Shown here: piece after piece, positions 2,869 through 27,034 of the stretch
Numbering within the stretch: position 1 is the stretch's first letter
Layout: every line of letters begins with the position of its first letter
Assembly: GCA_002269645.1 (NCBI GenBank)
Contig: NIVC01000743.1
Span: 1-35,572, forward strand
Direction of reading: 5' to 3'
Source of the DNA: Macrostomum lignano
Taxonomy: Eukaryota
DNA: 35,572 nucleotides
Translations under genes and position numbers: made by a program
Notes under the pieces: model-generated
Database searches by the model: none
The model's input: the letters and a program-made list of their open reading frames with translations, nothing else
Told to the model about the DNA's origin: nothing

Positions 2869-3001
<133 letters not shown>

Positions 3002-3551: not shown

Positions 3552-6500
3552 CTGCAATGTTGGGAAAAATTGTTTGCTATTATAGTTACTAATTATACTG
3601 TATTAGTGAATAGTGACTGTGTCCTTGATCTGACTGTCTTAAGATTCATCGATTTATCATGGCTTGTTCACCAGATTTAGGATATTACAAATGCTAGACA
3701 TAACAAGAAATAGAAATAATCTGACATGGGCATGTAGGGCATGTAAAGCGGATGGCTGCTGCACTGGCAGATAGCGCCAACCCTGGAGGCCGGCTGTGGC
3801 TGCAGAACGCATTGGCAAAATGGGAAACTCTCAGATTTTGTCATCAATTCTCAATATTTCACCTTCTGAACATCCGAATCGCAAATCGAACAAATCTAAG
3901 TTTTGTTCGAGGTGAGCTCACAAGTTTATTGAGCTAGCTTTCATGAAGTGCTACCTCACTCACTCACTCATTCACACTCACTCACTCACTCACTCACTCA
4001 CTCACTCACAAACTCACTCACTCACCCAATCACTTACTCACTCATTCACCCACTCACTCATTCACTCACTCACTCACTCACTCACTCACTCACTCACTCA
4101 CTCACTAACTCACTCACTCAATCACTCACTCACTCACTCACTCACTCACTCACTCACTCACTCACTCACTCACTCACTCACTAACTCACTCACTCACTCA
4201 CTCAATCACTCACTCACTCACTCACTCACTCACTCACTAACTCACTCACTCACTCACTCACTCACTCACTCACTCACTAACTCACCCACCCACTCACTCA
4301 CTCACTCACTCACTCACTCACTCACTCACTCACTCACTCACTCATTCACTCACTCACTCACTCACTCACTCACTCACTCACTCACTCACTCACTCACTCA
4401 CTCACTCACTCACTCACTCACTCACCCAATCACTCACTCACTCACTCACTCACTCACTCACTCACTCACTCACACACTCACTCACTCACTCACCCAATCA
4501 CTCACTCACTCACTCACTCACTCACTCACTCACTCACTCACTCACTCACTCACTCACTCACTCACTCACTCACTCACTCACTCACTCACTCACTCATTTT
4601 AATCAAACATCAAACAGCAAAGAAGAAAACCTTGCTCGCCTGCATGAAGCAGTACTTTAAATTCAAGGCTTTTGAAGCTAGGGACTAAAAGCTGAGTCCC
4701 GGCAGAACATAAATATAGAAAGAAGAATTGTGATTCCATTCCGGCACTATTTTCCCATTTGTCCTATTTTCAAACCCAAATTTCGGTGTCGCAGTTCGCT
4801 GTTTCTCTGCTTTCAGTAGCAAAAGGAAGAACGCAAAGGCTATTTTATAGAAGAAAGGCAGCTGGATGACCCGTAAAGAACTTGCTGTCGGTGGAGCAAT
4901 AAAGAAAATTTTCATTCCAATTCGAAATTGAGCTGTGCTTAATAGTGAAGCTTCCATTCTCAATTGCTGGCTGTGGAAAAAGCTAAAGGTTTTACTTTCA
5001 ATTTTGAAGCTGTGCATTCAGTTTTGACAAAAATGATTAACGCAAGCATATGTATGGAGATATAGCTTCGTTTTTAAAGTGTAGACATCCTAAAAGGTGC
5101 AGCTAGTTTCTAGCGGCTTGCTTGTAACCAAGGTTAAGAAAGAACAATCTAAATCCCCACGCTGAGTCCCCAACCTGGTCCGTACGGCTCCTCAATCCGG
5201 TAGTTCGTCTTCAAGTTCAGTTCGTCCCTCAGGCGCCTGGTCTGCACAGCGTAGACCTGCAGGTTTTAGGAGGGTTTGTGCGGTTTTAGCGGACTTCCCA
5301 TATCACCCAGTTGCTTAGGTAATAGCTTCCGCGAGCTTCTTCATGTAACAAGAACAACTTCATGTAACTAAAACAAGGATTTTAAGTTGTCCCCGACTGC
5401 TACTTAGTCGGTATATTTAACATTGAGCCATTTCTTAGCCAAGATGCATGTACCGTGCCAGGAAAATTTCTGATCAAATGGTGCAAGTCTGAAGAAAATC
5501 GGTTGAGCCAATTTTTCTGAAATCTATCGCATAGCTAGATAGATAGATAGATAGAGACAGACAACTCATTTTTAGTACTAGTCGGTATAAGCAAAGAAAC
5601 ACAGCTAATGGGCACAAGCGCTTGTGCAGTATTGCATACAGCAGCATTCAAGTCGCTTACGATGATAAAGATGACGAGGACAAGCAGGAAAAGTCCGCCA
5701 ATTACTGCAACCAGAATGATCAGGATGGTGTAATCCTGCGACACGGCCTCAGGGCCACCGCTTGTGGCTGTGCCGGCACTGGCTGCCGCAGTCGTGGCCG
5801 CTGCCCGAGTGGTGGATTCGACGGCCGTTGTCGTTGAGCTGGTACTGGTGAGGCTTGTGACGGCTGTGAATTTAGGGAACCATTCGAAATTATTTCATAT
5901 GGTATATACATGTCAAAGGCACAAAAAGCGCTTGCAATTTAAGCTGCTTTGCTCACCCGAAGATCCAATGTTATCGATGATGACACCACCCAGATCTGTT
6001 GCTTTCAAACCTTTTGTGAGAAGCTCGATAATAGAAGCTGCTGTGTTTGTAGACGTGTCTCGAACCACAAGGTTTCCACTGATGACAACACTTCCCGACT
6101 TAAACTGTAAGTTTACTGCGTTTTGCAGTTCACCATAAAGCGAAGTTGACCTGGATGATTTCATAATGGTCTCAAAGGCGTAGTTAGCCAGCTGCTTGTA
6201 GCGCCAACTGTTCGGGTCTGCATAGTCATCGAACCACTGCAAATTTGAAAAGCGGAACGAGAACGGCACGGTCTTGACGTTCTTAAACACAGGCTGGTAG
6301 TTGGACGGACAGATGCAAGACGTCGTTGTGGGCGCAACAGTCGTAGTTGTAGTCGGAGTTGTAGTAGTGGTGGAAGTAGTCGTTGTTGTTGTGGTGCTTG
6401 TAGTTGGAGTAGTAGTGGTAGTAGTCGGAGTGGTTGTGGTAGTAGTCGGAGTGGTTGTTGTAGTAGTCGGAGTGGTTGTGGTAGTAGTCGGAGTGGTTGT

Positions 6501-9500
6501 GGTTGTAGTCGGAGTGGTTGTGGTTGTAGTCGGAGTGGTTGTTGTAGTAGTCGGAGTGGTTGTGGTAGTAGTCGGAGTGGTTGTGGTAGTAGTCGGAGTG
6601 GTTGTGGTAGTAGTCGGAGTGGTTGTAGTAGTAGTCGGAGTGGTTGTGGTAGTAGTCGGAGTGGTTGTGGTAGTAGTCGGAGTGGTTGTGGTAGTAGTCG
6701 GAGTGGTTGTGGTAGTAGTCGGAGTGGTTGTGGTAGTAGTCGGAGTGGTTGTGGTAGTAGTCGGAGTGGTTGTGGTAGTAGTCGGAGTGGTTGTGGTAGT
6801 AGTCGGAGTGGTTGTGGTAGTAGTCGGAGTGGTTGTGGTAGTAGTGGTTATTGATGTAGTCGTTGTCAAACACACTGCTGGAACTGTCGTGAAGCAGCCG
6901 TTAATGATGAGGTACATTTGGAAATTCGTGCTCGTTGCTGAAGCCGTCTTGAGTGTGCGCGGCAAAATTATGAACTGAGCTACTGGAAAGCCGATGTCGA
7001 AGCACAGATCCGCCGCAGTGTCTGAGGATACCAAGCTAGCAAGATTTTGGAAAGGTGCCGCATAGAACTGCTTGTATCGAATCGTAGCCTCTCTAACGTT
7101 TCCAGAGAGACACAACTAGAATTATGGCAGGGTAGAGCATTTAAGACCGATGCGTTCTCTGCACTGCTTAGAGAAATAAAGCTAAAAAAGCTTACCCTGT
7201 CAATATAAATTCCACTACGACAGTTATTAATGGTAAGATCCACAGTCAAATATCCATCCGTACCGGTGCGAATATTGAAGCCAGTAGCATCACTGAAGCT
7301 GGTGGCCCCCGTGATATAGTCCATTGGCAGGAGCGATGAGTTCGACAGAGCGTTTACCATTGGACAGACTGAATAAACAATTTGCTTTTAGCCGTTAGCG
7401 TTCAGAATAAACAAACAATTTTGTCTTTACATAAAGGATAGTGCATTTGACTTACACGTGGTTCCCACAGTCGTAACGGTCGTGGGGGTTTTGGCAGTAG
7501 ATGAACTGCTGGTCGTCGTGCTTGACGTGGTTGCGCTAGTGCTTGTCCTCGTGCTGGTCGTTGGAGTGCATCCCGGAATCGGCATGAAGCAGCCATACAC
7601 CGACAGGAAGAAGTTGTAAGTGCTAGATCCGGTGGCTGCAGAAGACTTCAGTTCCTTCGGTGCGATGATGATAGAGCTCACGTTGAAGTTCAGGTCGTAG
7701 CACAGAAGTCCTGGACCGTCTTGAATAATAGTTGTGGACTGAACCAGTGGCAGGTATGACTGAGATGCCGATGTCTGGTAGATGAGGTCAGCTCTCTTTA
7801 CATTACCGCCGATAAGGCAAACCTAAAAAGTGCAAGGATTTTTCGGTTACAGATTGAATCGTGACGCGACTCTAATGACCAATTAAATCAATGCTACAGA
7901 GACTAATTGTACCTGTGTGATGTATTCTGGTCTGCGGCAGTTGTTGGATGTCAAATCGATGAAAAGTCCTTCGCCGGGTGCTCTAGACATTGTGTAGCCC
8001 AATACAGGAGAGAATGTTGCTCCACTGATGGCCCAGGAAGGCAGCAACGATGTATCAGCGATCGCATCGACAGCAGGACAAACTAAGAGAAATATTCAAG
8101 TTCAGTATACGATAACAAAAAGTTTTAAAAGAAATTAAGCCAAAGTACTTACATGTTGGCTTTGGTGTAGTAGTTGCTGTCGTAGTTGAACTTATTGTTG
8201 TCGATGTGGTGGAAGCTGTTGAAGTAGTTGGTGTTGTTGTTGCAGTTGACTTTGTTGTCTCCGTTGTGGAAGCAATTGGTGTTGTAGTTGTGGAAGATGT
8301 TGGCAGTGTAGTAGTTTTCGTCGTTGTTGGTGTAGTTGTAGTTGTAGAACTTGTTGATGGTGTCAATGTGCTTGAAGTTGTAGTAGAGGTCGAAGTTGTT
8401 GGAGATGTAGTCGATGTGCTGGTTGTTGGAGTCGTCGTTGTGGGTGTTGTAGTCGTACTCGTTGTTGTTGAAGTCGTGGTTGAAGTTGTCGTTGGAGTAG
8501 TAGTTGTGGTGGTAGTCGTTGGAGTCGTGAGGCAGGCGCTTGTTAGAGGCGTGAAGCAGGCATCGACTCTAACAAAGAAATTGAACATACTGTCGGTCGA
8601 GAACGATTTGAGTCGCAGAGGCACAATTGCTATTTTAGCTACAGTCTCTTTGTTGAGAACTGTGTAGCACCACGGACTCGTAGTGTCAACTGAGATGCTC
8701 GAAGCAGACAAATCAGGTGAGTACTTTTCAGTGCTTAATCTTGCAAACAGCAAGTTGGCTTCTCGCACGTTACCAATCAGACAAATCTGAAAGAATAAGC
8801 GGACATTCCAGTGTATGGAAACATGTGAGGAAAATATAGTTCAAGACACGTCATAAATGACATACAAACGCGTACCCTATCAACGACTATTGGCGGCCGA
8901 CATGAGTTTACAGTCAGATCAATCTCAAGGCTTCCGTTCTTCAGAGGAAGTCTGTAGCCATAGAATGGGTCGTATTCTCCACCAGTTACAGCGAATGAAG
9001 GAATCAAGTTGGACTGGTAGAAGCCGTCAATAGCGCAAGACGTTGTGGTTTCCAGTGTTGTGGTCAGAGTAGTTCTTGTTGTCGTCGATGTCGTAGTGCT
9101 GGTCGTTGGAGTCGTCGTAGTGGTAGATGTAGTCGGTGTAGTTGTAGTAGTGCTTGTTGTAACAGTAGTCGGCGTGGTCGGCGTTGTAGTAGTTGTAGTC
9201 GTGCTGGTAGTGCTGGTGCTGGTCGTTGTGGTCGGCGTGGTCAGACACGTGGAGTTAAGAGGATTGATGCAGGCCATGAGAGACACGAAGAACTGGTACT
9301 CGGTTGAGTTGTAGCCAGGCTTTGTAGCTTGAGGAACAATCACTAGTTCAGAGGTGAGTCTATTAAGATCATAGCACAGAGGATCTCCAGTTGAAGAAGT
9401 CTTTCCTGGCGTGTTGAAGTCGGGTACCAGTTTGTCGCTGGTTGGCTCTCGGATCAAGATTTGTGCATTGAACACGTTTCCAGCGATGCACAGCTGCAAT

Positions 9501-12500
9501 CACGATCGTTGACGATTAGTTAGATTAATGTTATATACGAGCGTAGTTACTAAGCGAGTAAGCATATCCATGTCGAAAACAGGAATACAACATCTAAACT
9601 TTACCCTTGAAATCACAGCAGCGGGTCGGCAGCCAAAGACAGTAAGATCGATTTTCAATGCGGCTTTGAGGGGAAGAATGTATCCAAAAAGCTCTCTGTA
9701 TGTGCCACCAGTGACTGCGAATGATGGCAGCAAGTCCGAACGACTGAAGGCATCAACGAGGCATGCTGAAAATCAAGTAGTCAGTTTTAAAAATGATTAA
9801 TCGCATTTTGTAAGCTGGGTTTCCAAAGAAACTCGAGAACAAAAACTAAAATGTTTCTTTTTAAACGTTGTTTTAACTTACAAGTAGTAGTAGTCGGGGT
9901 TGTTATTGTAGTTGTTGGAGTCGTCGTCACAGTCGTGGTGGGCGTAGTTGTAGTTCTAGTAGTGGTAGGTGTAGTTGTTGTAGTGGAAGTCGAAGAGGTG
10001 CTTGTCGATGTTGGCGTTGTTGTAGTTGTAGATGACGTTGGTAGAGTAGTTGGCGTTGTGGTTGTTGGCGTTGTGGTTGTTGGAGTTGTTGTAGGAGTTG
10101 TTGTTGGCGTTGTAGTTGTTGAAGTTGTGGTCGGTTTTGTTGTGCTTGTTGTTGTGCTTGTAGTGGGAGTTGTGGTACTTGTGGTAGTAGTAGTGGCTGT
10201 AGTCGTTGTGGTTGTGGTTGTTGGTGTTGTTTGGCATGTGTCGTTAAGCGGCAAGAAGCAAGCTTGTATAGTCAAGAAAAACTGATAGTTCACTGCAGGA
10301 GCTTGAAGAGCAGTAGGCTTGACTTGGAGCTCGACCATGTCGATGTTCAAATTGTAGCACAGTTGAGAACTACTAGTTTCATAGTTTATTGAGTCGGCGA
10401 AGATAACCGGATAGTCGGAATATGTTCTTCGATAAACCACGTTTGATCTTTTTACATTTCCTCCTATCAAGCAAACCTGAAATGTTCCAAGCGTTTTAAA
10501 CGGAGTATCTGAAGACAAAATTCTCGTAGTCTATAGTAAGCACACTGCTTAGCTGGTAAAACTACTACATCATTCGTAACAAAACTCAGAAACAAAAAAT
10601 ATTCAAATAGTTTTACGTGATAAACTGTTTAGGTTTGCTCTCAACACTAACTGTCGAACAAAAACTATAAGAGTTAAAGTACTAAATAGTACTTTATACT
10701 AATTGCTTAATAGTACTACGAGGGTGTTCAAAACGTCTTAGGACGTTTTCTCATTACTGTTGGGCTGCGCCCTTCCAGTGCTTGTGTACTTTGTCTTGTT
10801 TTCATTTTTTCATGCCGCCCCGCCCCGTCCCCCGTCTCGCGCCCGGGCCAGGGTTTGTGAGAGGCGTAAGCCTCAACCCTGGCCTAGCCCTTTCTGCACC
10901 CAGCCCCCGGCCCAACTTCTGTCCAATCTGGTTGCTGACCCTACCCCCTCCCTCTTTGCCCGCCTCACCCTAGGGCTGCTCGTATTGGCTGGCTGGCTGA
11001 TAAGCCGGCTGGGCCCCAGGGTTTGGCTCGCCCTCTCCATTCTGCCCCACCCCTCCCCTTTTCTGTGTAAATATTATGTAAAGGCTAGCCCTGAGCGGGC
11101 TGCGCTCCACGCTTTTCGTTCTTTCTGATTTTTCCGTTCTTCGGCGTACCTCTGCCCTTTGCGTACCAATAACTGCTTCGTGCCAATAACTGCTTTTTGC
11201 CAATAAACGTTCCGCCAATTCTAACGCCTTGTTAATAAGTCGATACATCAAGAAGAGGTGAGCGCGTGCTTTCTTCTTTCGGGTTGCCGCGTGGGGCCGG
11301 ATCTGTAGGGACCTGGGACCGGTGAACACTCGCTGATCCCAGGGTGGTCGGTCCGGCGAACTCTCGCCGAACCGAGCGAGGCGGTCGTCGGAGTAGCCAG
11401 GGAGGGCTGGGACCGGGGTGTCTCAGGCGGGAGGGCCCGAACCATGACCCGTCCAGCGGCCATTAGGCCGAGACACAACATTACTCTTTTTAACAGTCAG
11501 CAATAGTACTCCTTGCTTGGCACATCTTTCGTTTCTCTGTAATATACGTACCTGATAAACAGTCAAGGCTCCCCGGCATCCACGAGCTGTGAGGTCAATC
11601 GCTATGTATCCACCGCTGGAAACTGGAATGTTCCAGCCAGTAGCGCCGTCAAACGTCGCACCAGTGATCGTAAATTGCGGCAAGTACACAGGACTCGATA
11701 AACCATTAACGACGGGACAAACTGTAATGACAACGTGAAAATGTCTTATTTATTAAGTTATTAATACACTACTTCTCGAATACAGCTCTCAATGACAATT
11801 GAGCACTTAAAAGAATCATGTAACGATCTTATTTACTTGTTGTGGGCACTGTTGTAGTACTTGTACTTGTCAGAGTAGTTGTAGTGGTAGTGGTCGACGT
11901 TGTCGGTGTAGTTGTTGTGGTTGTTGTGGGTGTTGTAGTTGTTGTAGTAGTGGTCGTTGTTGTCGGAGTTGTCAAGCAGGTATTATTCAAAGGTGTGAAG
12001 CAAGCCTTGATTGTGATGTAAGCTCGAAATGCCGTGTCGGAGCTGAAAGCGCTCTTCAACTGTTGCGGTGAGATGCGCACACCAGTGAGCATCATTCCTG
12101 TAGGCGGAGTGAAGCACAACGGATCGGAAACCCCAGTAGCTGACTGGCTTGCAGACGGAAGATTCGGACTGAATGGTCCTCCGTATGTAGTTTGATACAG
12201 GATGTAGGAACTCTGAATGTTTCCTAGTAGACAAATCTGCAAAAACCGTTGTGTGGTACACAATGGGTATTGTCTAGTGGTATGTCTGAAATGTATTAGC
12301 AAAGTGTCACGTTGTAACGAAATTCCTGCTCAATACTCACGCTCTCAACAGTAATTGGCATGCGGCAGCCAAACACGGAGATGTCCACTGTCATTGTGTA
12401 GGTACCACCAGTTCGAATCATGTACCCTGAAGCAGTGTAATTGGCTCCACTGACTGCAAATGATGGAATAAAGCGCTCATCCGACAAGCCATCAACTGCA

Positions 12501-15500
12501 CATGAAGGCGTAGTTGTAGTAGCAGTGGTCGTTGTGCTCGTCGTCGTGCTCGTCGTTGATGTCGACGTGGTGGGTGTAGTTGTCGCTGTTGATGTTGTCG
12601 TCGGTGTAGTCGCAGTCGTTGTTGTGCTCGTCGAAGTGGTTGGTGTTGAAGTTGTCGTTGAGGTAGTCGTCGTAGTACACGATACTGGCAGAGGAGTGAA
12701 ACAGGCCTCGATGGAAAGGAAAAACTGATACAACGAATCGCCTGAGGCTGCGCTTTTAAACTCTTTCGGAACAATTCTCAGCTCGGAAATGGGAAGCATT
12801 GGGTAGTAGCACAGCGGTGTAGCAGTGTCACTTGTATTGTACAGCGACTGCTCGAAGAAGTCCCAGTAGAGGGTGGAGCCTTGACGGATGATAAGATCAG
12901 CTCGTTTTACATTACCGCCGAACAGACAAATCTAAAACGGAACGCATCTGATTTTAGCATTTGAAATTGCTATTTTATTTAAATATCAAGAAAAGAACAA
13001 GTTACATACCCTATTAATTAGGATCGGTGTGCGGCAACCGGATACAGAAATGTCCACATAGACGCCTTCCACTGAGCCTCTGGGTACATTATATCCTGTT
13101 AACGGATTATAACTAGGAGCATTGATAGAAGAACTAGGAATCAAGACGCCGTTGAGTCCGTTCACCAAACAGGATGTTGTTGTCGACGGAGTGGTTGTAG
13201 TAGTGCTAGTTGCTGTTGTGGTCGATGTCGGCGTTGTGCTAGTAGTTGTGGGAGTTGTTGTTGTGGATGAAGTAGTCGACGTTGTAGAAGTCGTCGTTGT
13301 CGACGTCGTTACAGGTTGAGTTTGACAGGCTGTAGTTAGAGGCGCGAAACAGCCCTCAAGGCTCAGGAAGAATAAATAATTCGTTTCCAGCGACGAGCTG
13401 TTCAGTAGTGCGACTGGCGTGATTGCAATGCTAGATATGTTTGCCCCGAGAGTTATGCAAAGAGGAGTCAACGAAGACGAGACAGATACCAAATTGGATT
13501 CCAAGACAAGATCGAACCGACCGGTCGGATAAGTCGTCTGGGTAGACACCGTTACCTGCCTTACATTTCCTGTCACACAAACTCTCGTTAGGTATGTAGG
13601 AACAGGATTACATCCTCCAGCAGTCAAATCTATGATAAGATCTCGTCTCGGACTCACTGGCATCTCGTATCGACCAGTTACATAAGTGGCGCCGGTAATG
13701 GCCCAATCAGGTATGTACTTTCTATCACTAAGGCCATTGAGTGCTGGACAAATTGTAGGCTTGACAGTAGTTGTAGACGTTGTTGTCGTTGACGTTGTCG
13801 TAGGAGTTGTAGTTGTGCTGGTAGTTGTAGGTGTTGTAGTGGTTGTTGAAGTAGTCGTCGGTGTTGTGGTAGTGCTACTAGTTGTAGTAGGCGTTGTAGT
13901 TGTGCTTGTAGTACTCGAAGTTGGAGTGGTTGAAGTGGTAGATGTAGATGTTGAAGTGGAGGTTGTTGGTGCGACTGTGGTAGACGTCGTCGTTGGAGTT
14001 GTAGTGGTAGTAGGAGTAGTCGATGTCGATGTTGTTGGTGTAGTTGTGGTTGACGTCGTCGTGGGTGTCGTTGTCGTTGACGTCGTCGTGGGTGTCGTTG
14101 TTGTGGTGGTGGTTGTTGTAGTCGTAGTAGTGAGACAGCTGGCATTTAAGGCAGTGAAGCAGCCGTAGATATTCATATAAAATGTGAAATCTGATCCTGT
14201 TCCAGGAGTCATTGTCTGTGGCATCAGCTGCAAACCGGTGATGTCTCTGTTCACTTGAAGACAAAGCAGCCCGTTTCCACCCGTAACGGATGCAGGGAAA
14301 AGCACAAGCCTAGAATCCAGATTGTTCTGTACTGAAATCAGAGTCGTTTGCACATTTCCACCGAGACAGACGCTAAAAATTCGAATTGGCGCACGACATC
14401 CGCGAGCAGAGATATCCACCACAATAGAACCAAGTGGTTGAACAACGAATGCTCCTGCTCGATTAATAGATGCCCCAGAAATGTCTTGATCTGGTATAAA
14501 CTGCGCGCTTGTCATTCCGTCGACCACAGGACAGTCTAAAAATAATATTTTTACAGACAAATGATGATTATAACAAAAAACAATAAAATGAAACGAAAGG
14601 GTTAGATTTCTATTACTACTAATTCTTACAGGTCGTAGGTGTAGTTGTAGTAGTAGAAGTTGTTGTCGGTGTCGTCGGAGTAGTGCTTGTCGTTGTGCTG
14701 GGTGTCGTTGAAGTAGTTGAAGGCGTGGTTGTAGCTGTACTGGTTGTTGTAGGAGTTGTAGGGGTTGTTGTTGGTTCTTTTGTTGTTGTTGATGTTGTTG
14801 TGCTTGTTGTGCTTGAAGTTGGTGTTGTCGTCGGTGTAGTGGTTGTTGGGGTCGATGTCGTCGGTGTTGTTGTAGTCGATGTCGTTGGTGTTGTTGTGGT
14901 TGATGTTGTTGTTGAGGTTGTGGGAGTAGTTGTAGTTGACGTTGTTGATGTCGTCGTAGTCGTTGTAAGACAGGACGCGTTTAAGTTGCTGAAGCAGCCA
15001 TAGATCGATAAGAAGAAGTAGTAGGAACTTGCTGTCGTCTTTAATAGCTGCGGTTCTACCTGAACACTGATGACATCTCTGTTTACATCAATGCACAGAA
15101 TTTCTCCTTCCTTTGCAGTGAGCGTAGCCGAGTCAGGGATCAGGTAGGGAATCACGTCTGTGTTGAATCGCACCAGAACAAATGCTTGAGCAACGTTTCC
15201 AGCTATGCAAACCTAAAATTTAGGTTAGTGTGATATTATAGTCAATGATTGTGTCAGTTGGCAGAAATGCTGCTTTTTCTTACTCTTAGAACCCGAGTTG
15301 CGGGACGACAGCCTCTCGACGAGATGTCGACAATGACAGACGTTCTTTGCTGAAGTGTAAACGCTCCTGAGACTTGACGAGTGCTGTTACCGAATGTCGC
15401 AATGTCGATAGCGGGGATCATCGAAGGGTACAGCATACCATCGACGCTGGGGCAATCTGCGATTGAGCGCCAGATTTAGGCAATATTAAAATCTTATTTC

Positions 15501-18500
15501 TTATAGAGTCGATATACAAAGCCAAGTTAACAGGCCTAGTATGGTGTCCTTAAAGCATATGTACTAGTCCCTGTAGCGCTACACATTTAAACTAATTAGT
15601 TCGTAAAAGAAATAAAGCGTTGGTATGTATTTTTCTTTGCTAGAACTGTTTCTTTTTTTAGTTTTTAATTTATTATTCTTGTTTTGTGTTCTTTGAAATT
15701 CGTGCGTTGTTGTCGCAAGTACATTTTTTAGTTTGTCAACTGGTTGCTGGTATAGAATTTAACATATGCTCGTAATTTATTTAGATCTATTCTCTTGATG
15801 AAGAAAAAAACACTTTTATTTAGCAATTGATATCAATTTGATGTTTGTTTTATTATTACTACCAGTCATAGCAAAGCTACTGCAATATCTGATTCTAAGT
15901 TAAGGCTAAAGTTAAAGCAACGACATTAGGACTATCTAACCTAGTCAAAAACAATTTCGCAATCATATCTTATCAAAGGAAGAAGTCAGAAACTAGCAAC
16001 TCTATCGAAGTTAAGCGGCTATGCCGTAGGCCCCTGCAAAATCGTCAACTAATTTAAAGTATCTTTATTTCCTTTCTAACAACAAATACAGGCTGCTTGC
16101 TGAGAAAACTACATTTTATATGCTTTTAATAGCGTGACTCGGCTATAGGCGATAGGGTAACAAGAGGTTTCGGTGAATGTGACTTTGGCAAAAGAGGTTT
16201 TGGCGACTGGCTGATAAGTTCGTGATGCCTGTTACATAGGTGAATATAATATGCTCGCATTGTTCAACACTGCAGCTGACCATGCGTGGTCTACAGGTTG
16301 CGTGCGTTGGCTGGGATCTTGCAGGTCAGGAGTTCGAATTTTTGTGTACTTTTTTTAGTTTTTGGTGCTGACATATGACTGCAGGTTGCACAACCGATTA
16401 GTGGGTGTGGTAATTTTTTGAGTAGCATGTAAGTAGCAAGAAAATTTCAGTGCTACTAAACCTGTTGTGTATGGATGATCATATTGTTTGTCATTCAATC
16501 TGGTCCGAGTCGATCAATAAGTAACCATCTGCTTTTTAGGCTTTCCTTTTCGCTACAGTTTTAGGCTTTCCTTTTCGCTACAGTTTTAGGCTTGAAGAGA
16601 TTTAGTGTGCCCTGGGTCTGTACACAGGCATAAACTCGATGGTAGTGTAGGTTTGAGATGATCGCTGTTGTTAGCAGTTCAACAAACACAAATCTTATAG
16701 TTGACTAACCGCTACAGCGTGATACGTCCCGTTCGATAACTTTAGATACATGTAAAGCTCAAATGTCTAGAAATCAACTTACAGGTTGTACTCGGGGCTG
16801 TTGTAGTCGTACTTGTTGTTGGTGTCGTTGTAGTCGGCTTCGTTGTCGTGGTCGTCGACGTTGTTGTTGGAGTTGTTGATGTAGTTGTCGACGTCGACGT
16901 CGATGTCGTTGTTGGAGTAGTTGTAGTCGTCGAAGTGGTCGGTGTAGTGGTCGTCGTCGTTGAAGTCGTAGTCGTAGTCGGAGTCGTAGTAGTTATGGTA
17001 GTTGTAGGTGTGGTCGTCGATGTAGTAGTTGACGTAGTAGTCGTTGGCGCAGTGCAAGTGCTCGGCAGTGGTTCGAAGCAACCCTCAATGGTGACGGAGA
17101 ACCGGAAGTTTGTCGCAGCCGAATCATAAGACTTTACCAATTGAGGAGCGATTCTCACTGCCGATATGTTGAATCCGATCGAGTAGCAAAGCGAGTCAGC
17201 CATGGCGTCCCCGGTGGTGGTGAAAGATAGCTCAGAAAAGACCAGATTTGCAGTGACGCTTCTTTGCAAACGGATGTTGGCTTGTTTGATGTTTCCGTAA
17301 AGACAGATCTGAAATGCACCAGGTTGAGTTATGGTCGGGTATGAGCTACAATCGGACTCATCAGACATTTATGGTTATTAATAGTAACTGTCCGTATACC
17401 CTCTCAATGTAGACTGGATTTGGTCGGCAGTTTACGGCAGACAAATCAATGTCCATAAATCCGGACGCGGACCTTGAAATGCTGTATCCAAAGATAGGGT
17501 CAGACGAGACTCCGCTGATAGAGTAGGATGGAATGTAGGTATTGCTCGAAAGTCCATTTATTAGTGGGCAGACTGAAAAAGTGCGTAGTAGTTGAAGGTC
17601 GGTAAAAAAGTTGAAAAAAAATACCATCGAAAAATCGCGAAACAAGAAACTTACTCGTTGGCTTTGGAGTCGTAGTAGTTGTTGTAGTTGTTGTCGGAGT
17701 GGTGGTTGTTGGCGGTGTAGTAGTTGTGGATGTTGTTGGTTTGGTGGTTGTCGTTAACGTTGTAGCAGTCGTTGTGGGAGTGGTTGATGTCGTTGTAGTC
17801 GAGGTAGTGGAAGTCGTCGTTGTTGGCGTCGTTGTTGGCGTAGATTGAGTGGTGGTTGTCGTTGATGGTGTCGTCGTCGTAGTTGTCGTTGGTGATGTCG
17901 TCGATGTTGTTGTCGTAGACGTAGTTGTGGTAGGCGTAGTTGTGGTAGGTGAAGTTGTGGTTGATGTGGTAGTTGGAGTAATTGTTGTTGATGTTGTCAA
18001 TGTAGTCGATTTGGTGGTAGTAGACGTTGGGGTAGTGGTAGTGCTGGTAGTGCTTGTAGTTGTTGTTGGCGTTGTCAGACACACTGCGGAAAGCGGCAAG
18101 AAGCACGCGTTGATCGTGAGGTAGAACTGGTACTGGGTTTTGTTCGGTGCCGACGACTTGAACTCCAATGGAAAAATTCCTATCTTGGCCGCAACTAGTT
18201 TAATGTCGTAGCACAGATCTCCAACATCGCTCGATACGGATGCTGATCTCGGCACAGGGACGAATGGCCTATCGGATGTTTCACCGTACAAAATGTTGGC
18301 CCGTTTTACAGTGCCACTGATACAGATCTGAAAAAACAGTATATAGAATTAAATTTTCCACAAATAATAAAAAACGTTTTTTTACTTATATGAGTAACGA
18401 TTTGATCGACGAACTTACACTTTCAATTAGAATTGGGCTGCGGCAACTTCCCAGTACCAGGTCAATTTGCATGACGTCATTTTGGTAAACCAGCCAGCCG

Positions 18501-20824
18501 CGAAGTGGATCATTCGTTGCGTCTGCCACGGCAGTCGTCGGAATGTAGGAGTAGTCCGACATGCCGTTTACGATGCGACAGTCTAAAATTTTTATGGTTG
18601 ATTCGTAGGCTTCGCTTCTCATGTCATCAACGGCAGTATCGGATTTTTTTGTTGAGAAACTGCCACTTGGCTTTAGCGGCCTATTTTTCTAATATAAATT
18701 TCTTAGTTCCTAACACTGCACTCACAAGTCGTAGTGGTGGGCGTTGTTGTCGTGGTGGTTGTCGGCGTTGTGCTGGTGGTTGTGGTGGATGTCGTCGGAG
18801 TTGTAGTGGGTGTTGTCGGCGTCGTTGTAGTAGTAGTAGATGTAGTCGTCGGGGTCGTAGTAGTGCTGGTAGTGGTAGAAGTTGTAGTGCTTGTGGAGGT
18901 AGTTTGGCAGCTGTCATTAACCGGTGTGAAGCAGCCGTCGATGGTGAGGAATACCTGGTAGTTGGTGGCCGAGAGGGCTCCGGACTTCAGTGCGACTGGA
19001 TAAAAGGCAAGCCGAACCATCCTCGTATTCAGCTCATAGCACAGCCTGGCGCCAGTGACATCAGAAAACAGGGAGCTGGACGGCTCAAATGGGACGTAGC
19101 GGCTACTGGTGGTAGGCATGTACTTTACCAAGGCTCGCATCACGTTTCCAGTCATGCACAGAGTGTTCACAAAAATTTCAGTAGTTCGACAGCCATCGAC
19201 AATGAAGTCGAACTCCATCTGATCGTTGAAACTGATCAGAAAATCACCAGACATTCCCGGCCGTCCACCGGAGATGGATTTGTCCGGGATGTAAGACTTC
19301 TGCGACAGACCGTTCACGTAGTTGCAGACTGAAATTCGCAACATTGAGGGCGTGTTGGTGATGAAGCTCGAAAGATAACTGATAAAAATTTCGCTAGCAA
19401 ATAAAAGACATCTTATCATAAAAAAGTGCCAAACTCACCGGGCGTGGAAGTTGGCAGTGGCGTCGTCGTAGTTGAAGTCGACGTCGTGCTTGAAGTAGTT
19501 GTTGGCGTGGTTGTGGTCACGGTGGTGGTGGGAGTAGTCGGAGTTGGTGTTGTGAAGAAGTACTTGGTGGTGAGCGGCACGCATGAACAGAAGGGCTCGG
19601 CTGTTGTGAAGCCGGCGGCAGGCGTTGCCAGGACGGCCAAAACGGCTACTGCTGCGGCGATGCCTGTCGAAAGGTGATCGAAAATCAATGTGCTGCTTGT
19701 TGAATTTCATTAGCACTCGGCAAGGGGACCGAAGTACCAACAGGCGTTTTAACTCAGGCAATTTGGTCTAGGTACTCCAATGGTTATATGTGCAGTGTCT
19801 CTAAACTTAGTCGTTGCTAGTTACTAAAATGGTGGTCGTGAGTTTCCTAAGTACCAACCATTCAGTGGTGGTGATTTTCACGCTTTTTTAAAGTAAGTAA
19901 ACTTGGTCACTTCGTTACCGTTAATAGTATGTTATTGTCGATTGGACCGTTTGAACTCGAAAGTATATTAGGATACCTTTTCTGTAGCAGAAAACTAGAA
20001 ACGAAGTTATCAAGTCAATATTTTTTTCTCTATGATTCAGAGACCTGTTTTGTGAACAGAAAGAAGCTTATCTCCCCCCTACTGATAGTAGTCTTGCTAG
20101 AATCATATTTAAATATGTCCATTTTTGGCAGGTACAACAGTAGCAAAGATAAAAAATCAGCACATCCAGGCCACATAAGCAGTGAGTAAGCTTTTTCATC
20201 AGGGGGGGGGGGCGTAGCCCAGCGGTCTAGCGCAGGCTCTGGTGTGCCAGCGACCCAGGCTCGATTCCAAGTGCAGTCACATTAATTTGGGGCTGAATTG
20301 GAATCTCGGCTTGGCTCTGCTCGTGCAATTAACGGCCTTGAGAGCCAACCCCCCAAGGCGCAGTGAAGTGTACATGCCTAACGATAAAATAAAGTTAGGG
20401 CTGCTGTACACTCCTGTGTGAGTGTGTGCCTGCGTACGTATCCGCGCGCTTGTGTGCCTGCTCAGGGGAGTCGGTGGAATCCCTCTGCTTCTAATAAAAA
20501 AAAACATTTTTATCATTTTTGTGTAAAATTCAGTAATTCAATAATTAATATGCTCGTATTTGAATGAGTTTTACTATAAAGAAAAAAGGAGCTTTAAAGT
20601 AACAACTCATTTCGCATCGGTTCCAGTAAAAATCATGCAGGCTTTTATGAGCTCTAATGTACGCTATGATTTTTTTTGTTCAGTTGAAAATAAGCATATA
20701 CCGACCGTGAGCAGCGCTAAACGCATTTTATTTTTAAGGTCTACCAATTGTTAAAAGTATGAATAGCTTAAAATAGACGGGCCCTGGACTCACTCAGCAT
20801 TGCAGGTTGAGCAGAGATGGACAT
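3484..20824 (-). CDS. Giant multi-exon transmembrane mucin-like protein (~3,355 aa): SP - [6-Cys domain + PTS]x13 - SEA - TM - short cytoplasmic tail
   Basis: 24 hand-called GT-AG exons whose phases all match (CDS sum 10,068 nt, divisible by 3). Internal exons are well supported by the repeated motif. The first exon and the last two are less certain. Confidence 0.85.
3954..4597. repeat. (TCAC)n microsatellite, ~640 bp
   Basis: Near-perfect tetranucleotide run; it produces spurious THSL ORFs. Confidence 0.98.
5175..5256 (-). CDS. Mucin exon 23: end of TM and juxtamembrane tail ([27 protein letters not shown])
   Basis: Phase-0 acceptor cctgcag, basic residues right after the TM, GC3-rich codons. 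The donor (AG/GTTGGG) is weak. Confidence 0.7.
5661..5863 (-). CDS. Mucin exon 22: Ser/Thr/Ala stalk + transmembrane helix
   Basis: [43 protein letters not shown]; acceptor ttcacag, donor GTAAGC; phase 1-0. Confidence 0.88.
5957..7115 (-). CDS. Mucin exon 21: module 13 C-half + VNTR PTS + SEA domain
   Basis: LCLSGNV..IINGCF..C, then (TTTTPTT)n, then a ~105-aa region with [16 protein letters not shown], which fits the SEA pattern; donor GTGAGC; phase 0-1. Confidence 0.9.
6415..6846 (-). repeat. Coding 21-bp VNTR (~20 copies, TTTTPTT)
   Basis: Plus-strand unit GTAGTAGTCGGAGTGGTTGTG, almost invariant. Confidence 0.95.
7196..7368 (-). CDS. Mucin exon 20: module 13, N-half
   Basis: [24 protein letters not shown]; donor GTAAGC; phase 1-0. 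Confidence 0.88.
7456..7822 (-). CDS. Mucin exon 19: module 12, C-half + short PTS
   Basis: [28 protein letters not shown]; donor GTAAGT; phase 0-1. Confidence 0.88.
7913..8082 (-). CDS. Mucin exon 18: module 12, N-half (not in ORF track)
   Basis: Own translation: [56 protein letters not shown]; phase 1-0. Confidence 0.87.
8153..8786 (-). CDS. Mucin exon 17: module 11, C-half + PTS
   Basis: [25 protein letters not shown]; donor GTAAGT; phase 0-1. Confidence 0.9.
8876..9493 (-). CDS. Mucin exon 16: module 10 C-half + PTS + module 11 N-half
   Basis: [43 protein letters not shown]; phase 0-0. Confidence 0.9.
9605..9765 (-). CDS. Mucin exon 15: module 10, N-half
   Basis: [24 protein letters not shown]; phase 1-0. 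Confidence 0.87.
9882..10476 (-). CDS. Mucin exon 14: module 9, C-half + PTS
   Basis: [32 protein letters not shown]; donor GTAAGT; phase 0-1. Confidence 0.9.
10758..11480 (+). mobile_element. Solo LTR (723 bp) in a mucin intron
   Basis: Starts TGTTG, ends CAACA, flanked by TTAC on both sides (10754-10757 and 11481-11484). It is GC-rich within an AT-rich intron and has an internal AATAAA near 11202. Confidence 0.8.
11552..11721 (-). CDS. Mucin exon 13: module 9, N-half
   Basis: [17 protein letters not shown]; donor GTACGT; phase 1-0. Confidence 0.87.
11837..12236 (-). CDS. Mucin exon 12: module 8, C-half + PTS
   Basis: [26 protein letters not shown]; phase 0-1. Confidence 0.88.
12341..12931 (-). 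CDS. Mucin exon 11: module 7 C-half + PTS + module 8 N-half
   Basis: [41 protein letters not shown]; donor GTGAGT; phase 0-0. Confidence 0.9.
13010..14535 (-). CDS. Mucin exon 10: modules 5 and 6 complete plus module 7 N-half
   Basis: Single 1,526-nt open exon holding 2.5 domain copies and two PTS tracts; donor GTATGT; phase 1-0. Confidence 0.9.
14630..15212 (-). CDS. Mucin exon 9: module 4, C-half + PTS
   Basis: [26 protein letters not shown]; donor GTAAGA; phase 0-1. Confidence 0.9.
15284..15456 (-). CDS. Mucin exon 8: module 4, N-half
   Basis: [22 protein letters not shown]; donor GTAAGA; phase 1-0. Confidence 0.85.
16537..16593. repeat. 25-bp tandem duplication (TTTTAGGCTTTCCTTTTCGCTACAG, ~2.3 copies)
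   Basis: Read directly from the sequence. Confidence 0.85.
16783..17308 (-). CDS. Mucin exon 7: module 3, C-half + PTS
   Basis: [23 protein letters not shown]; donor GTAAGT; phase 0-1. Confidence 0.9.
17400..17572 (-). CDS. Mucin exon 6: module 3, N-half
   Basis: [23 protein letters not shown]; phase 1-0. Confidence 0.88.
17655..18327 (-). CDS. Mucin exon 5: module 2, C-half + PTS
   Basis: [25 protein letters not shown]; donor GTAAGT; phase 0-1. Confidence 0.9.
18419..18582 (-). CDS. Mucin exon 4: module 2, N-half
   Basis: [22 protein letters not shown]; donor GTAAGT; phase 1-0. Confidence 0.88.
18726..19328 (-). CDS. Mucin exon 3: module 1 (whole domain + PTS, no internal intron)
   Basis: [35 protein letters not shown] then Thr tract; AG/GTGAGT; phase 1-1. 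Confidence 0.9.
19439..19663 (-). CDS. Mucin exon 2: signal peptide core ([17 protein letters not shown]), CxC motif, short PTS
   Basis: Acceptor ctttcgacag, donor GTGAGT, phase 1-1, hydrophobic Ala/Val/Leu stretch. Confidence 0.85.
20202..20504 (+). mobile_element. tRNA-headed SINE-like element in mucin intron 1
   Basis: A-box TAGCCCAGCGG (20215-20225) and B-box-like GGCTCGATTCC (20258-20268) at tRNA-like spacing, then ~230 nt of body and an AATAAAAAAAAA tail. No canonical cloverleaf. Confidence 0.6.
20794..20824 (-). CDS. Mucin exon 1 (putative start: [11 protein letters not shown])
   Basis: ATG at 20824, 31 nt, phase-1 donor GTGAGT. It joins exon 2 in frame and completes a signal peptide. 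Confidence 0.55.

Positions 20825-26848: not shown

Positions 26849-26935
<87 letters not shown>

Positions 26936-26981: not shown

Positions 26982-27034
<53 letters not shown>

What the first reader, a model, noticed from the sequence alone, without database searches (positions are those of the whole stretch)
6880..19328. Thirteen copies of an unnamed ~140-aa six-cysteine domain spaced by Thr-rich linkers
Seen: after splicing, each module follows C-x2-3-[ND]-G-[LM]..[IL]P..[IV][ST]G..G[YWF]..[IV]D[LI][TS]..C-R-x-P..|..C-[LI]-x-G-N-V..L-C-Y..P..L-K..F-[FY]-L-[ST]-I-x-[GA]-C-F-x-P-L-x3-C. Six Cys positions are kept while the loops diverge strongly between copies. Established: F5/8 type C (discoidin) domains begin C..PLGM...IPD..I.AS, contain an LQVDL strand and end ..[32 protein letters not shown] and FYMNIYGC echo these. 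Inference: a divergent discoidin-like beta-sandwich with extra disulfides, displayed like beads on a glycosylated string. It could be an array of lectin or adhesion modules with different specificities. I know of no named mucin with this module.
Basis: partly seen in the sequence, partly recalled or inferred. Interest (0 to 1): 0.85.

Follow-up and report, generated by a model that had tools for sequence, protein, structure and literature searches.

The report
Flatworm membrane mucin with discoidin beads
A flatworm (Macrostomum lignano) gene encodes a giant cell-surface mucin in which thirteen very divergent discoidin-type (coagulation factor V/VIII C-like) beta-sandwich domains alternate with threonine-rich spacers that are probably sugar-coated; the domain has no Pfam model, but both the fold and this kind of protein are familiar.

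Summary
On the minus strand, 19661-5149, lies one intron-containing gene: 22 exons, all introns GT-AG, an open reading frame of at least 3330 aa. It encodes a signal-peptide-like segment and 13 modules of 133-142 aa, each with six invariant Cys. Each module is followed by a spacer that is 74-90% Ser+Thr. Then come a 21-nt x 21 repeat encoding a Thr-rich stretch, a SEA domain with a G/SVVI site, one transmembrane helix and a short tail. Near-identical UniProt fragments place the window in Macrostomum lignano.

AlphaFold models (pLDDT 93.9 and 87.6) match solved discoidin/F5-8C domains best (CASPR2, neuropilin b1, FVIII C2, DDR; TM-score 0.54-0.68). No Pfam model matches any module. Sequence homology to F5/8C shows only through a two-Cys relative found in a chiton "mucin-2-like" protein and in an unidentified eukaryote's mucin-like module array. 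hhalign gives 98.9% from the window modules to these relatives, and 58% (P 1e-4, far above decoys) from the relatives to canonical F5/8C.

Ligand binding is untested. F5/8C domains in lophotrochozoan mucin-like proteins are already published, so this is a new, unnamed variant of a known kind.

The parts
19439..19661 (-). First recognisable exon. It encodes the hydrophobic signal-peptide core ([17 protein letters not shown]), the conserved [13 protein letters not shown] motif (19592-19554) and a short Thr/Pro stretch. The 5' end and start codon are unresolved.
   Evidence: The motif is 15/15 identical to the N-terminus of paralog P0001. The ATG at about 19709 is in another frame, and an acceptor-like TTTCGACAG precedes the hydrophobic core.
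18907..19326 (-). Module M1 (C1..C6), no intron.
   Evidence: AlphaFold model pLDDT 93.9; discoidin-like by Foldseek.
18079..18580 (-). Module M2, with a phase-0 intron at 18418-18328.
17054..17570 (-). Module M3, with a phase-0 intron at 17399-17309.
   Evidence: The splice agrees with UniProt fragment P0003.
14970..15454 (-). Module M4, with a phase-0 intron at 15283-15213. It is preceded by a 1326-nt phase-1 intron at 16782-15457.
14135..14533 (-). Module M5, no intron.
13325..13750 (-). Module M6, no intron.
12677..13171 (-). Module M7, with a phase-0 intron at 13009-12932.
11976..12502 (-). Module M8, with a phase-0 intron at 12340-12237.
   Evidence: UniProt fragment P0004 is 97% identical here.
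10234..11719 (-). Module M9, with a long (1075 nt) phase-0 intron at 11551-10477.
9245..9763 (-). Module M10, with a phase-0 intron at 9604-9494.
8532..9037 (-). Module M11, with a phase-0 intron at 8875-8787.
7568..8080 (-). Module M12, with a phase-0 intron at 7912-7823.
6870..7366 (-). Module M13, with a phase-0 intron at 7195-7116.
6318..6869 (-). Last and longest Thr-rich (PTS) region, 184 aa. Its core is a 21-nt x 21.2 tandem repeat (6400-6845, 97% matches) encoding TTTTTTP units.
   Evidence: The 12 inter-module spacers (35-139 aa, 74-90% S+T) lie between the modules listed above.
5958..6320 (-). [12 protein letters not shown] motif (6320-6285) and the SEA domain (6302-5958). The autoproteolysis-type site [10 protein letters not shown] is at 6104-6075.
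   Evidence: Pfam PF01390, E 5e-9 to 1e-8, 35.8-36.6 bits against a cut-off of 26.4. 55% identical to the SEA region of paralog P0019. Motif coordinates.
5245..5863 (-). Juxtamembrane Ser/Thr/Ala stalk and the single transmembrane helix [28 protein letters not shown] (5732-5245), split by an intron at 5660-5257.
   Evidence: 64% identical to the transmembrane helix of P0001.
5149..5244 (-). Cytoplasmic tail of 31 aa ([31 protein letters not shown]) and the stop codon.
   Evidence: The exon was placed by a weak match to the paralog tail (VYAVYSRRMRSDLKQK; E 0.6), so it is the least certain exon.

Best explanation
What it is. This is a type I transmembrane mucin of the SEA class from the flatworm Macrostomum lignano.

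Shown by the analysis. One minus-strand gene has 22 exons and an uninterrupted reading frame of at least 3330 codons. It encodes 13 homologous six-Cys modules, each followed by a Thr-rich spacer. After these come a repeat-encoded Thr-rich region, a SEA domain with a G/SVV site, one transmembrane helix and a short tail. Each module is confidently predicted to be an eight-stranded jelly-roll beta-sandwich, and its nearest solved relatives are discoidin (F5/8 type C) domains. The modules are clear homologues of a two-Cys module that also sits between Thr-rich stretches in mucin-like genes of other animals. That two-Cys module gives a colinear, above-decoy profile match to canonical F5/8C. The module order is conserved between paralogues, so each bead keeps its own identity.

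Inferred mechanism. The Thr-rich spacers are densely O-glycosylated and stiff, so the protein stands up from an epithelial cell surface as a rod of a few hundred nanometres. Along it, 13 disulfide-locked discoidin-like beads are spaced out. As in other discoidin/CBM32-type domains, the loops at the end of the barrel opposite the termini would bind ligands such as glycans, other mucins, matrix or microbes. This would make a multivalent array with position-specific specificities inside the glycocalyx. The SEA domain is probably self-cleaved and holds the ectodomain non-covalently, so the ectodomain can be shed under force.
For: Gene model. All 21 introns are GT-AG and there is one ORF.

Modules. 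All 13 are homologous, with pairwise E 3e-38 to 2e-10 and fixed Cys spacing.

Spacers and membrane end. Spacer composition and Thr = 32% of residues. SEA above the Pfam cut-off. G/SVVI site, transmembrane helix and tail.

Species. UniProt M. lignano fragments P0004 and P0006 are 97-98% identical to the window.

Paralogues. P0001/P0019 and P0005 have the same architecture: signal peptide, modules, SEA-like region, transmembrane helix.

Fold. pLDDT 93.9 and pTM 0.87 for M1, with top Foldseek hits CASPR2, NRP2 b1, CBM32 and DDR1. pLDDT 87.6 for the two-Cys relative, with top hits NRP1 b1 (TM 0.65), FVIII C2, DDR2 and CASPR2.

Sequence chain. Window modules to two-Cys modules: hhalign 98.85%, E 4e-17. 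Two-Cys modules to canonical F5/8C: 58.4%, P 9.7e-5, 129 colinear columns, with the Cys aligned. Reversed and 40 column-shuffled decoys scored at most 12.9 against 33.0.

Context elsewhere. At least 9 two-Cys modules alternate with Thr-rich exons in L001. TIL-VWD-TIL exons lie upstream of a Thr-rich-plus-module exon in L005. The chiton protein P0007, 'mucin-2-like', has 7 copies.

Positional orthology. Paralogue modules match M1, M2, M3, M4, M8, M10, M12 and M13 in the same order, at 38-53% identity (46-53% for all but M1) against 28-43% for the next best module.

Literature. F5_F8 domains are characteristic of lophotrochozoan mucin-like proteins (PMC4948705).
Against: - No Pfam model, including PF00754, matches any module.
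- HMMER profiles find no PDB chain.
- The direct profile-profile comparison of the window modules with canonical F5/8C is insignificant (0.3%). The link rests on an intermediate step at 58% probability plus fold similarity at TM 0.5-0.68, which alone cannot exclude convergence within the galactose-binding-like superfamily.
- Most canonical F5/8C signature residues (W of NAW, TQG, GN.D, R..R) are not kept.
- No expression, glycosylation, cleavage or binding data were available.
- Disulfide pairing could not be measured, because the tools do not return model coordinates.
- The start codon was not found.
- Loops are barely more variable than strands. This does not particularly favour diversifying binding loops.
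Confidence: 0.7

Rival explanations
1. The fold and architecture are as in the best explanation, but the beads are not lectins. They would act like the CysD domains of MUC2/MUC5AC: compact, disulfide-locked, protease-resistant knots that interrupt the glycosylated rod and make homotypic, non-covalent contacts. These contacts would organise or cross-link the glycocalyx.
For: The arrangement 'globular Cys domain between PTS stretches' is that of CysD in gel-forming mucins (PMC3195396, listed). Conservation is spread over the whole domain rather than sparing the loops. Canonical ligand-binding signature residues are not kept. There are three disulfide-capable Cys pairs per 140 aa.
Against: Position-specific conservation of 13 different beads between paralogues is not needed for a generic spacer or cross-linker. 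The nearest structural relatives are ligand-binding domains.
Confidence: 0.3
2. The discoidin resemblance is convergence, or membership of a different galactose-binding-like family (for example CBM32-like or laminin-N-like). On this reading the module is an independent family, not a descendant of F5/8C.
For: No Pfam hit. Direct hhalign 0.3%. TM-scores are only 0.5-0.68, and bacterial CBM32, IFT25 and netrin LN domains are among the Foldseek hits.
Against: The two-Cys relatives hit almost only animal discoidin domains at the top of the list. They also give a full-length colinear profile match with both Cys aligned, far above decoys. Canonical F5_F8 domains already sit in lophotrochozoan mucin-like proteins, which is a plausible source.
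Confidence: 0.15
3. The protein is mainly a shed or secreted adhesive component, for example part of the temporary adhesion system. It would be comparable to sea-urchin Nectin (six tandem discoidin domains), with the membrane anchor serving only for delivery.
For: SEA cleavage would allow release of the ectodomain. Multi-discoidin proteins are adhesives in echinoderms (PMC10057474). [quoted passage not shown]
Against: The two known M. lignano glue proteins have a different architecture (vWD, C8, TIL, EGF, TSP-1, C-type lectin) and no SEA or transmembrane segment. No expression data link this gene to adhesive organs.
Confidence: 0.1
4. The locus is a decaying pseudogene or an assembly artefact of repeated sequence.
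For: No in-frame ATG precedes the signal-peptide core, and the nearest ATG is out of frame. The region is rich in tandem repeats.
Against: There are 3330 codons without a stop across 22 exons, with canonical splice sites. The six Cys are invariant in all 13 modules. The modules are 25-45% identical to one another, so they are not recent assembly duplicates. Independent UniProt gene models cover parts of the locus.
Confidence: 0.03

Closest known systems
Discoidin / F5/8 type C domain (Pfam PF00754; neuropilin b1, factor V/VIII C1-C2, DDR1/2, CASPR2, lactadherin, retinoschisin)
   Same: About 140-155 aa, extracellular. It begins with a Cys followed by x-x-[LD]-G-M..I(P)..I(T/S), has a (Q/I)-[VI]-D-L strand and ends at ..G-C. 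It has the same eight-stranded jelly roll (TM 0.54-0.68). The profile match through the two-Cys relatives is colinear.
   Different: There is no PF00754 match at any threshold. Most signature residues are lost, and the segment aligning with the first spike loops is about 10 residues shorter than in the two-Cys relatives. Four extra invariant Cys are present (C2, C3, C4, C6), and a C-terminal extension (F-x-P-L-x3-C) follows the canonical last Cys. Identity to solved domains is 7-17%.
Protostome gel-forming mucin-like proteins carrying F5_F8_type_C domains (hemolectin/hemocytin type; Lang et al. 2016, PMC4948705)
   Same: Discoidin-type domains sit within a mucin-like protein next to PTS sequence, reported as characteristic of Lophotrochozoa. 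The two-Cys relatives here lie downstream of TIL-VWD-TIL exons in L005.
   Different: Those proteins are secreted VWD-C8-TIL polymers with a few Pfam-recognisable F5_F8 domains. The window gene shows no VWD, C8 or TIL in the parts scanned with Pfam. It is membrane-anchored through SEA plus a transmembrane helix, and carries 13 unrecognisable copies, each paired with its own PTS spacer.
SEA-type transmembrane mucins (vertebrate MUC1, MUC3, MUC12, MUC13, MUC16, MUC17)
   Same: Signal peptide, long PTS region with a VNTR-like repeat, membrane-proximal SEA domain with a G/SVV-type site, a single transmembrane helix and a short cytoplasmic tail.
   Different: From my own knowledge, vertebrate members have no globular domains spaced through the PTS region; MUC16 repeats SEA domains and MUC3/12/13/17 have EGF domains beside the SEA domain. 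Orthology to any of them was not tested and is not claimed.
CysD domains of MUC2/MUC5AC/MUC5B (Pfam PF13330)
   Same: Small disulfide-rich globular domains that interrupt heavily O-glycosylated PTS stretches, giving the same 'beads on a string' logic (PMC3195396, listed).
   Different: The family is unrelated: no PF13330 hit, and six Cys per module, against the WxxW motif and about ten Cys that I recall for CysD (own knowledge). The predicted fold here is a jelly roll.
Sea-urchin Nectin (six tandem discoidin domains; PMC10057474)
   Same: A multi-copy array of discoidin-fold domains in an extracellular invertebrate glycoprotein.
   Different: Nectin's domains are canonical FA58C, 47-55% identical to one another, directly abutting, secreted, and have no PTS spacers, SEA or transmembrane segment.

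Membership tests
F5/8 type C (discoidin) domain, Pfam PF00754 | Match to the family's profile HMM at or above the gathering score. | tested here: not met
   No PF00754 or PF22633 hit for any of the 13 window modules, 5 Macrostomum/other modules or 8 two-Cys modules, even at E<=10. Positive control: 8 of 8 canonical domains hit PF00754 with best E 1.8e-35.
F5/8 type C (discoidin) domain, Pfam PF00754 | Eight-stranded distorted jelly-roll beta-barrel superposable on solved discoidin domains. | tested here: met
   The AlphaFold models have pLDDT 93.9 and 87.6, with 8-10 strands. Foldseek top hits are CASPR2, NRP1/2 b1, FVIII C2 and DDR1/2, with E 1.5e-5 to 1e-3 and TM 0.54-0.68. These are predictions, not solved structures.
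F5/8 type C (discoidin) domain, Pfam PF00754 | Disulfide between the first and last Cys, tying the N and C termini together. | tested here: inconclusive
   C1 and C5 (the G/A-C-F Cys) align with the two canonical Cys in hhalign. They are also the only Cys kept in most two-Cys relatives. Model coordinates are not returned by the tools, so the S-S distance could not be measured.
F5/8 type C (discoidin) domain, Pfam PF00754 | Detectable sequence homology to canonical members by profile-profile comparison. | tested here: inconclusive
   Direct comparison of window modules with canonical domains: 0.3%. Mixed alignment: 15.5%, P 0.0017. Via the two-Cys relatives: 98.85%, then 58.4%, P 9.7e-5, over 129 colinear columns. 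Decoys reached at most score 12.9 against 33.0. The canonical set was only 8 sequences, recalled from memory and checked against PDB.
F5/8 type C (discoidin) domain, Pfam PF00754 | Signature residues (W of N-A-W, T-Q-G, G-N-x-D, R..R..P). | tested here: not met
   These are invariant in the canonical set. In the window modules only the D of (I/V)-D-L, a G-N in a different place and the P of I-x-P are kept.
F5/8 type C (discoidin) domain, Pfam PF00754 | Ligand binding through the loops ('spikes') at the end of the barrel opposite the termini. | not testable with these tools
   This needs recombinant modules tested on glycan, lipid or protein arrays.
SEA-type transmembrane mucin | Long Pro/Thr/Ser-rich (PTS) regions. 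| tested here: met
   12 spacers of 35-139 aa at 74-90% S+T, plus a 184-aa terminal PTS region encoded by a 21-nt x 21 repeat. Thr makes up 32% of the protein.
SEA-type transmembrane mucin | Membrane-proximal SEA domain. | tested here: met
   PF01390 scores 35.8-36.6 bits against a cut-off of 26.4, about 45 residues before the transmembrane helix.
SEA-type transmembrane mucin | G/SVVV-type autoproteolysis site, and actual cleavage. | tested here: inconclusive
   The sequence [10 protein letters not shown] is present at 6104-6075. Paralogues have EG-SVKA and SG-SVAF. Cleavage itself cannot be tested here.
SEA-type transmembrane mucin | Signal peptide, single transmembrane helix, short cytoplasmic tail. 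| tested here: inconclusive
   The transmembrane helix (28 hydrophobic residues followed by QTRRLR) and a 31-aa tail are read directly from the sequence. A signal-peptide core is present, but no in-frame start codon was found.
SEA-type transmembrane mucin | Dense O-glycosylation of the PTS regions. | not testable with these tools
   Inferred from composition only.
CysD domain (PF13330) | Match to the Pfam model; the WxxW motif and about ten Cys in about 110 aa (these two features from my own knowledge). | tested here: not met
   No PF13330 hit at E<=10. The modules have six Cys and a predicted jelly-roll fold.
Gel-forming mucin (VWD-C8-TIL polymer) | N-terminal VWD-C8-TIL assemblies. | tested here: not met
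   The Pfam scans covered the first 927 residues, the M5-M7 stretch and the C-terminal 287-400 residues, and found only SEA. The rest of the model is made of modules (scanned singly) and Thr-rich spacers. VWD and TIL exons were seen only next to a two-Cys relative in another organism's contig, L005.

The most novel reading that the evidence does not exclude
The six-Cys module and its two-Cys relatives may form a previously unrecognised 'mucin bead' domain family found across Spiralia and descended from F5/8C. In Macrostomum it would have been recruited from secreted VWD-type mucins into SEA-type membrane mucins and expanded to 13 positionally fixed copies. Each copy would have its own ligand specificity, making the protein a multivalent cell-surface lectin array: a glycan or microbe reader built into the glycocalyx, rather than a passive barrier.
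Probability: 0.3. Interest if true: 0.65.

Novelty: new variant of a known kind. Interest (0 to 1): 0.45.

Why it matters
Mucin classification and mucin-finding pipelines rely on a short list of domains: VWD, C8, TIL, CysD, SEA and PTS. This module has no Pfam model. UniProt and NCBI label its carriers with uninformative names such as 'Membrane-associated protein', 'ZP domain-containing' and 'mucin-2-like', or with a name that Pfam did not reproduce here ('DUF3707').

A profile for this module would allow three things:
- finding and classifying spiralian mucins of this type;
- testing whether discoidin-type beads do in protostomes what CysD does in vertebrate mucins;
- studying a membrane mucin with built-in binding domains in an animal where RNAi and in situ hybridisation are routine (Macrostomum lignano).

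The 13 old, individually conserved beads are also a natural series for studying how the discoidin scaffold diversifies.

It remains a variant of familiar parts. Nothing here points to a new mechanism.

Tried and rejected
(1) Word-indexed protein searches. With the module profiles these returned nothing useful: A1 gave none, A2 gave only its own member P0010, and A4 gave two fragments from the same ENA sample. The taxonomic range therefore rests on the single exhaustive HMM search, which used a Macrostomum-only profile and probably misses distant members.

(2) HMMER against PDB sequences, using A1 and A4. Only chance-level hits appeared: HcgC, coronavirus spike and eIF3j, at E 0.6-8. Rejected.

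(3) Bacterial hits. P0011, P0013, P0014 and P0015 (E 3e-8 to 1e-4, 6-9 short stretches each) are long repeat proteins that match only a 30-60-residue part of the profile. I judged them spurious accumulation over repeats and did not follow them up.

(4) Direct hhalign of the window modules against canonical F5/8C is insignificant. The link appears only through the two-Cys relatives.

(5) Test for loops evolving faster than strands. The difference is negligible, 1.87 against 1.77 bits.

(6) Automatic splice-site scoring picked five wrong introns. I replaced them with the homology-consistent alternatives.

(7) Start codon. No in-frame ATG was found. Trans-splicing onto the acceptor-like site would not restore the frame by my reading. 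Left unresolved.

(8) Mlig-ap1 and Mlig-ap2 glue proteins. Considered and rejected on architecture.

(9) Rfam. No hits in the window.

(10) The two long introns contain no repeat shared with the rest of the window.

(11) Disulfide connectivity could not be derived, because model coordinates are not exposed.


Full report
**What is in the sequence.** The window has eukaryotic features: spliced genes, microsatellites and a retroelement fragment. Stop-to-stop translation of the minus strand between about 19700 and 5100 shows a chain of open segments. In these, a cysteine-containing unit of about 140 aa alternates with runs of Thr, Ser and Pro. The + strand ORFs over the same DNA are V/G-rich mirror images of the Thr codons. 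I extracted 13 units and aligned them. Identity is 26-39% to the first unit. The invariant columns are six Cys, P16, D42, G62 and P112, and R49, V57, N63, L97 and F135 are nearly invariant.

**Gene model.** Ten of the 13 modules are split at the same place by a short phase-0 intron (71-111 nt, but 1075 nt in M9). M1, M5 and M6 are not split. The GT donor of this intron is what reads through as an apparent Val. Nine of the 13 modules also begin a new exon after a phase-1 intron placed 2 nt before the first Cys codon, typically with a GTAAGT or GTGAGT donor. M6, M7, M8 and M11 instead continue directly from the preceding spacer in the same exon. After I replaced five automatic splice choices with the homology-consistent ones, the model has 22 exons, 21 GT-AG introns and one ORF of 3330 codons ending at 5149. 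Cys spacing is nearly fixed at 44-48, 10-11, 35-40, 33-38 and 7-8 residues. All 78 module pairs are significant by BLASTP, with E 3e-38 to 2e-10 at 25-45% identity.

**The rest of the protein.** Upstream of M1 is a hydrophobic signal-peptide core, a conserved [13 protein letters not shown] motif and a short Thr/Pro stretch. The 12 spacers between modules are 35-139 aa and 74-90% Ser+Thr. After M13 comes a 184-aa Thr-rich region encoded by a 21-nt unit repeated 21 times at 97% identity. Next is a second C-x-C motif ([12 protein letters not shown]), then a SEA domain scoring above the Pfam cut-off that contains [10 protein letters not shown], the G/SVV-type self-cleavage motif. A Ser/Thr/Ala stalk follows, then one transmembrane helix followed by QTRRLR, and a 31-aa tail. 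This is the architecture of a SEA-type transmembrane mucin. The Pfam scans, which covered the first 927 residues, the M5-M7 stretch and the C-terminal end, found no other family. The start codon is unresolved. The only nearby ATG (about 19709) is in another frame, and an acceptor-like site precedes the hydrophobic core.

**Origin and relatives.** An exhaustive profile search of 1.84 billion representative proteins found only 18 hits.
- The best hits are UniProt entries of the free-living flatworm Macrostomum lignano.
- P0004 and P0006 are 97-98% identical to the window, so the window is M. lignano or something very close to it.
- P0001/P0019 is a paralogue at 37-53% identity with the same N-terminal motif, SEA domain, transmembrane helix and tail.
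- P0005 is a more distant paralogue with about four modules, a SEA-like region and a transmembrane helix.
- The paralogue's modules match M1, M2, M3, M4, M8, M10, M12 and M13 in the same order, at 38-53% identity (46-53% for all but M1) against 28-43% for the next best window module. The array therefore predates the gene duplication, and each position has kept its own identity. There is no concerted evolution.
- Outside Macrostomum, the true hits are a chiton protein (Liolophura sinensis XP_064614628.1, 'mucin-2-like', seven copies) and short ORFs from one ENA assembly.

**The two-Cys relatives.** These outside hits carry a variant of the module that keeps only C1 and C5. Contig L001 has 36% GC and exon-sized ORFs. 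It carries at least nine such modules in tandem on one strand, interleaved with Thr-rich exons. On another contig of the same sample, L005, TIL, VWD and TIL exons lie upstream, on the same strand, of a Thr-rich-plus-module exon. The module is thus repeatedly tied to mucin-type proteins: a membrane type in Macrostomum and probably a secreted VWD type elsewhere. Whether the VWD-TIL exons and the module on L005 belong to one gene is not shown.

**Fold.** AlphaFold2 on M1 with the 13-module alignment gave pLDDT 93.9 and pTM 0.87, an all-beta domain with eight main strands. Foldseek against PDB put the CASPR2 discoidin domain first (E 1.5e-5, TM 0.54). Next came neuropilin-2 b1, Clostridium CBM32 modules, DDR1, IFT25 and netrin/laminin LN domains. 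All of these are, to my knowledge, classed in the galactose-binding-domain-like superfamily. The model of a two-Cys module (P0010, pLDDT 87.6) hit animal discoidin domains almost exclusively. These were neuropilin-1 b1 (TM 0.65, 16-17% identity), factor VIII C2, DDR2 (TM 0.67) and CASPR2.

**Sequence-level tests of membership.**
- Pfam finds nothing for any module, even at E<=10. The same tool finds PF00754 in all eight canonical controls.
- HMMER profiles find no PDB chain.
- For profile-profile tests I built a small canonical alignment: NRP1 b1, lactadherin C2, retinoschisin, DDR1, FVIII C2, CASPR2 and FV C1/C2. Seven gave near-identical full-length matches of 339-367 bits (FV C2 100% identical, FV C1 copied from the PDB alignment). 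Lactadherin C2 matched only at 241-253 bits.
- Window modules against canonical domains: 0.3%, not significant.
- Two-Cys modules against window modules: 98.85%, E 4e-17.
- Two-Cys modules against canonical domains: 58.4%, P 9.7e-5, over 129 colinear columns from the first Cys to the last. DGM..IP..IS lines up with LGM..I..ITAS, VDL with QVDL, and A-C-F with G-C.
- Controls: reversed alignments and 40 column-shuffled decoys reached at most score 12.9 and probability 0.2%, against 33.0 for the real comparison.

My reading is remote homology to F5/8C through an intermediate subfamily. It is supported by the fold but not proven. C1 and C5 correspond to the canonical disulfide pair. C2, C3, C4 and C6 are additions, and their pairing I could not determine.

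**How it probably works.** Shown: the architecture, the predicted fold, the homologies and the positional conservation. Inferred from what is established for mucins and discoidin domains:
- The Thr-rich spacers are O-glycosylated and extended. At roughly 0.25 nm per residue, about 1300 spacer residues plus 13 beads would span a few hundred nanometres.
- The beads are rigid, disulfide-locked domains exposed between glycan brushes.
- They would bind ligands through the loops opposite their termini, as neuropilin, DDR, factor V/VIII, discoidin I and CBM32 do.
- The SEA domain would be self-cleaved, letting the ectodomain detach under load.

The main rival is that the beads act like CysD domains, as structural or cross-linking knots rather than lectins. 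The even spread of divergence over strands and loops mildly favours this rival. The position-specific conservation of 13 different beads mildly favours specific functions.

**Comparison with what is known.** The two known M. lignano glue proteins have a different architecture. I found no paper on this gene or domain. However, Lang et al. 2016 report that F5_F8_type_C domains sit next to PTS sequence in hemolectin-type proteins and are characteristic of lophotrochozoan mucin-like proteins. Multi-discoidin adhesive proteins such as Nectin are also known. What is new here is threefold:
- a subfamily so divergent that no Pfam model detects it;
- the six-Cys form of the domain;
- its use as 13 regularly spaced beads in a SEA-type membrane mucin.

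**Verdict.** It is a new variant of a known kind. It is of moderate interest, mainly for mucin evolution and domain annotation.

Noticed in passing
window 32360-32887 and 33283-33450, minus strand: Exons of a neighbouring gene encode an I/LWEQ (talin/HIP1-type actin-binding) domain: Pfam PF01608, E 1.3e-39 and 7.5e-6. This is probably the 3' end of a HIP1/HIP1R-like gene downstream of a large minisatellite.
   Followed up: partly
window 29552-32338: A GC-rich (about 64%) minisatellite with a 25-nt unit in 112 copies at 92% identity. It creates three long artefactual ORFs (up to 1159 aa) on the + strand.
   Followed up: partly
window 2869-3001, 3955-4596, 24911-25794, 26495-27058, 27910-28482, 33890-34343: Several further micro- and minisatellites: (GATA)33, (CTCA)161, a 27-nt unit x 33, (TGTC)147, a 25/48-nt unit, and a 22-nt unit x 21. 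Roughly a fifth of the window is tandem repeat.
   Followed up: no
window 2394-2792, + strand: A fragment of a retroelement pol gene: the RNase H-like domain of reverse transcriptase, PF17917, E 1e-13.
   Followed up: no
window 19592-19554 and 6320-6285, minus strand: The only four Cys outside the modules form two C-x-C motifs that bracket the whole mucin region: FCSCVP just after the signal peptide and [12 protein letters not shown] just before the SEA domain. Both are conserved in paralogues (15/15 identity at the N-terminus; ICGCSANYRPVF in P0005). They could be sites for intra- or intermolecular disulfides.
   Followed up: partly
window 19720-19640, minus strand: The nearest ATG (about 19709) would give a good signal-peptide n-region ([16 protein letters not shown]) but is out of frame with the hydrophobic core. 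This is either a 1-nt indel in the assembly or allele, or a missing upstream exon joined at the acceptor-like TTTCGACAG.
   Followed up: partly
C-terminal end of modules M1, M4, M5, M8, M9 and M10 (for example window 18921-18907 for M1): Six of the 13 modules have an N-glycosylation sequon directly before the last Cys (N-x-S/T-C, for example LNASC, LNDTC). Every module has 1-2 sequons in all.
   Followed up: no
L005 1559-5824 (+), with the module exon at 9923-10657 (+); ENA ERZ25069853 ctg14003l: In an unidentified eukaryote, TIL, VWD and TIL exons precede a Thr-rich-plus-two-Cys-module exon on the same strand. This suggests a gel-forming mucin that carries this domain. A near-identical module exon on contig L001 is instead preceded by other modules, so there are either two paralogues or a structural variant.
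   Followed up: partly
P0003, P0005, P0020 (UniProt A0A1I8FZS0, A0A1I8IX78, A0A1I8J2C9): The automatic names of the M. lignano relatives ('ZP domain-containing', 'PKD domain-containing', 'DUF3707 domain-containing') were not reproduced by Pfam scans here. They look like mis-annotations, probably caused by low-complexity sequence, and several of these gene models read the Thr-rich exons in the wrong frame.
   Followed up: partly
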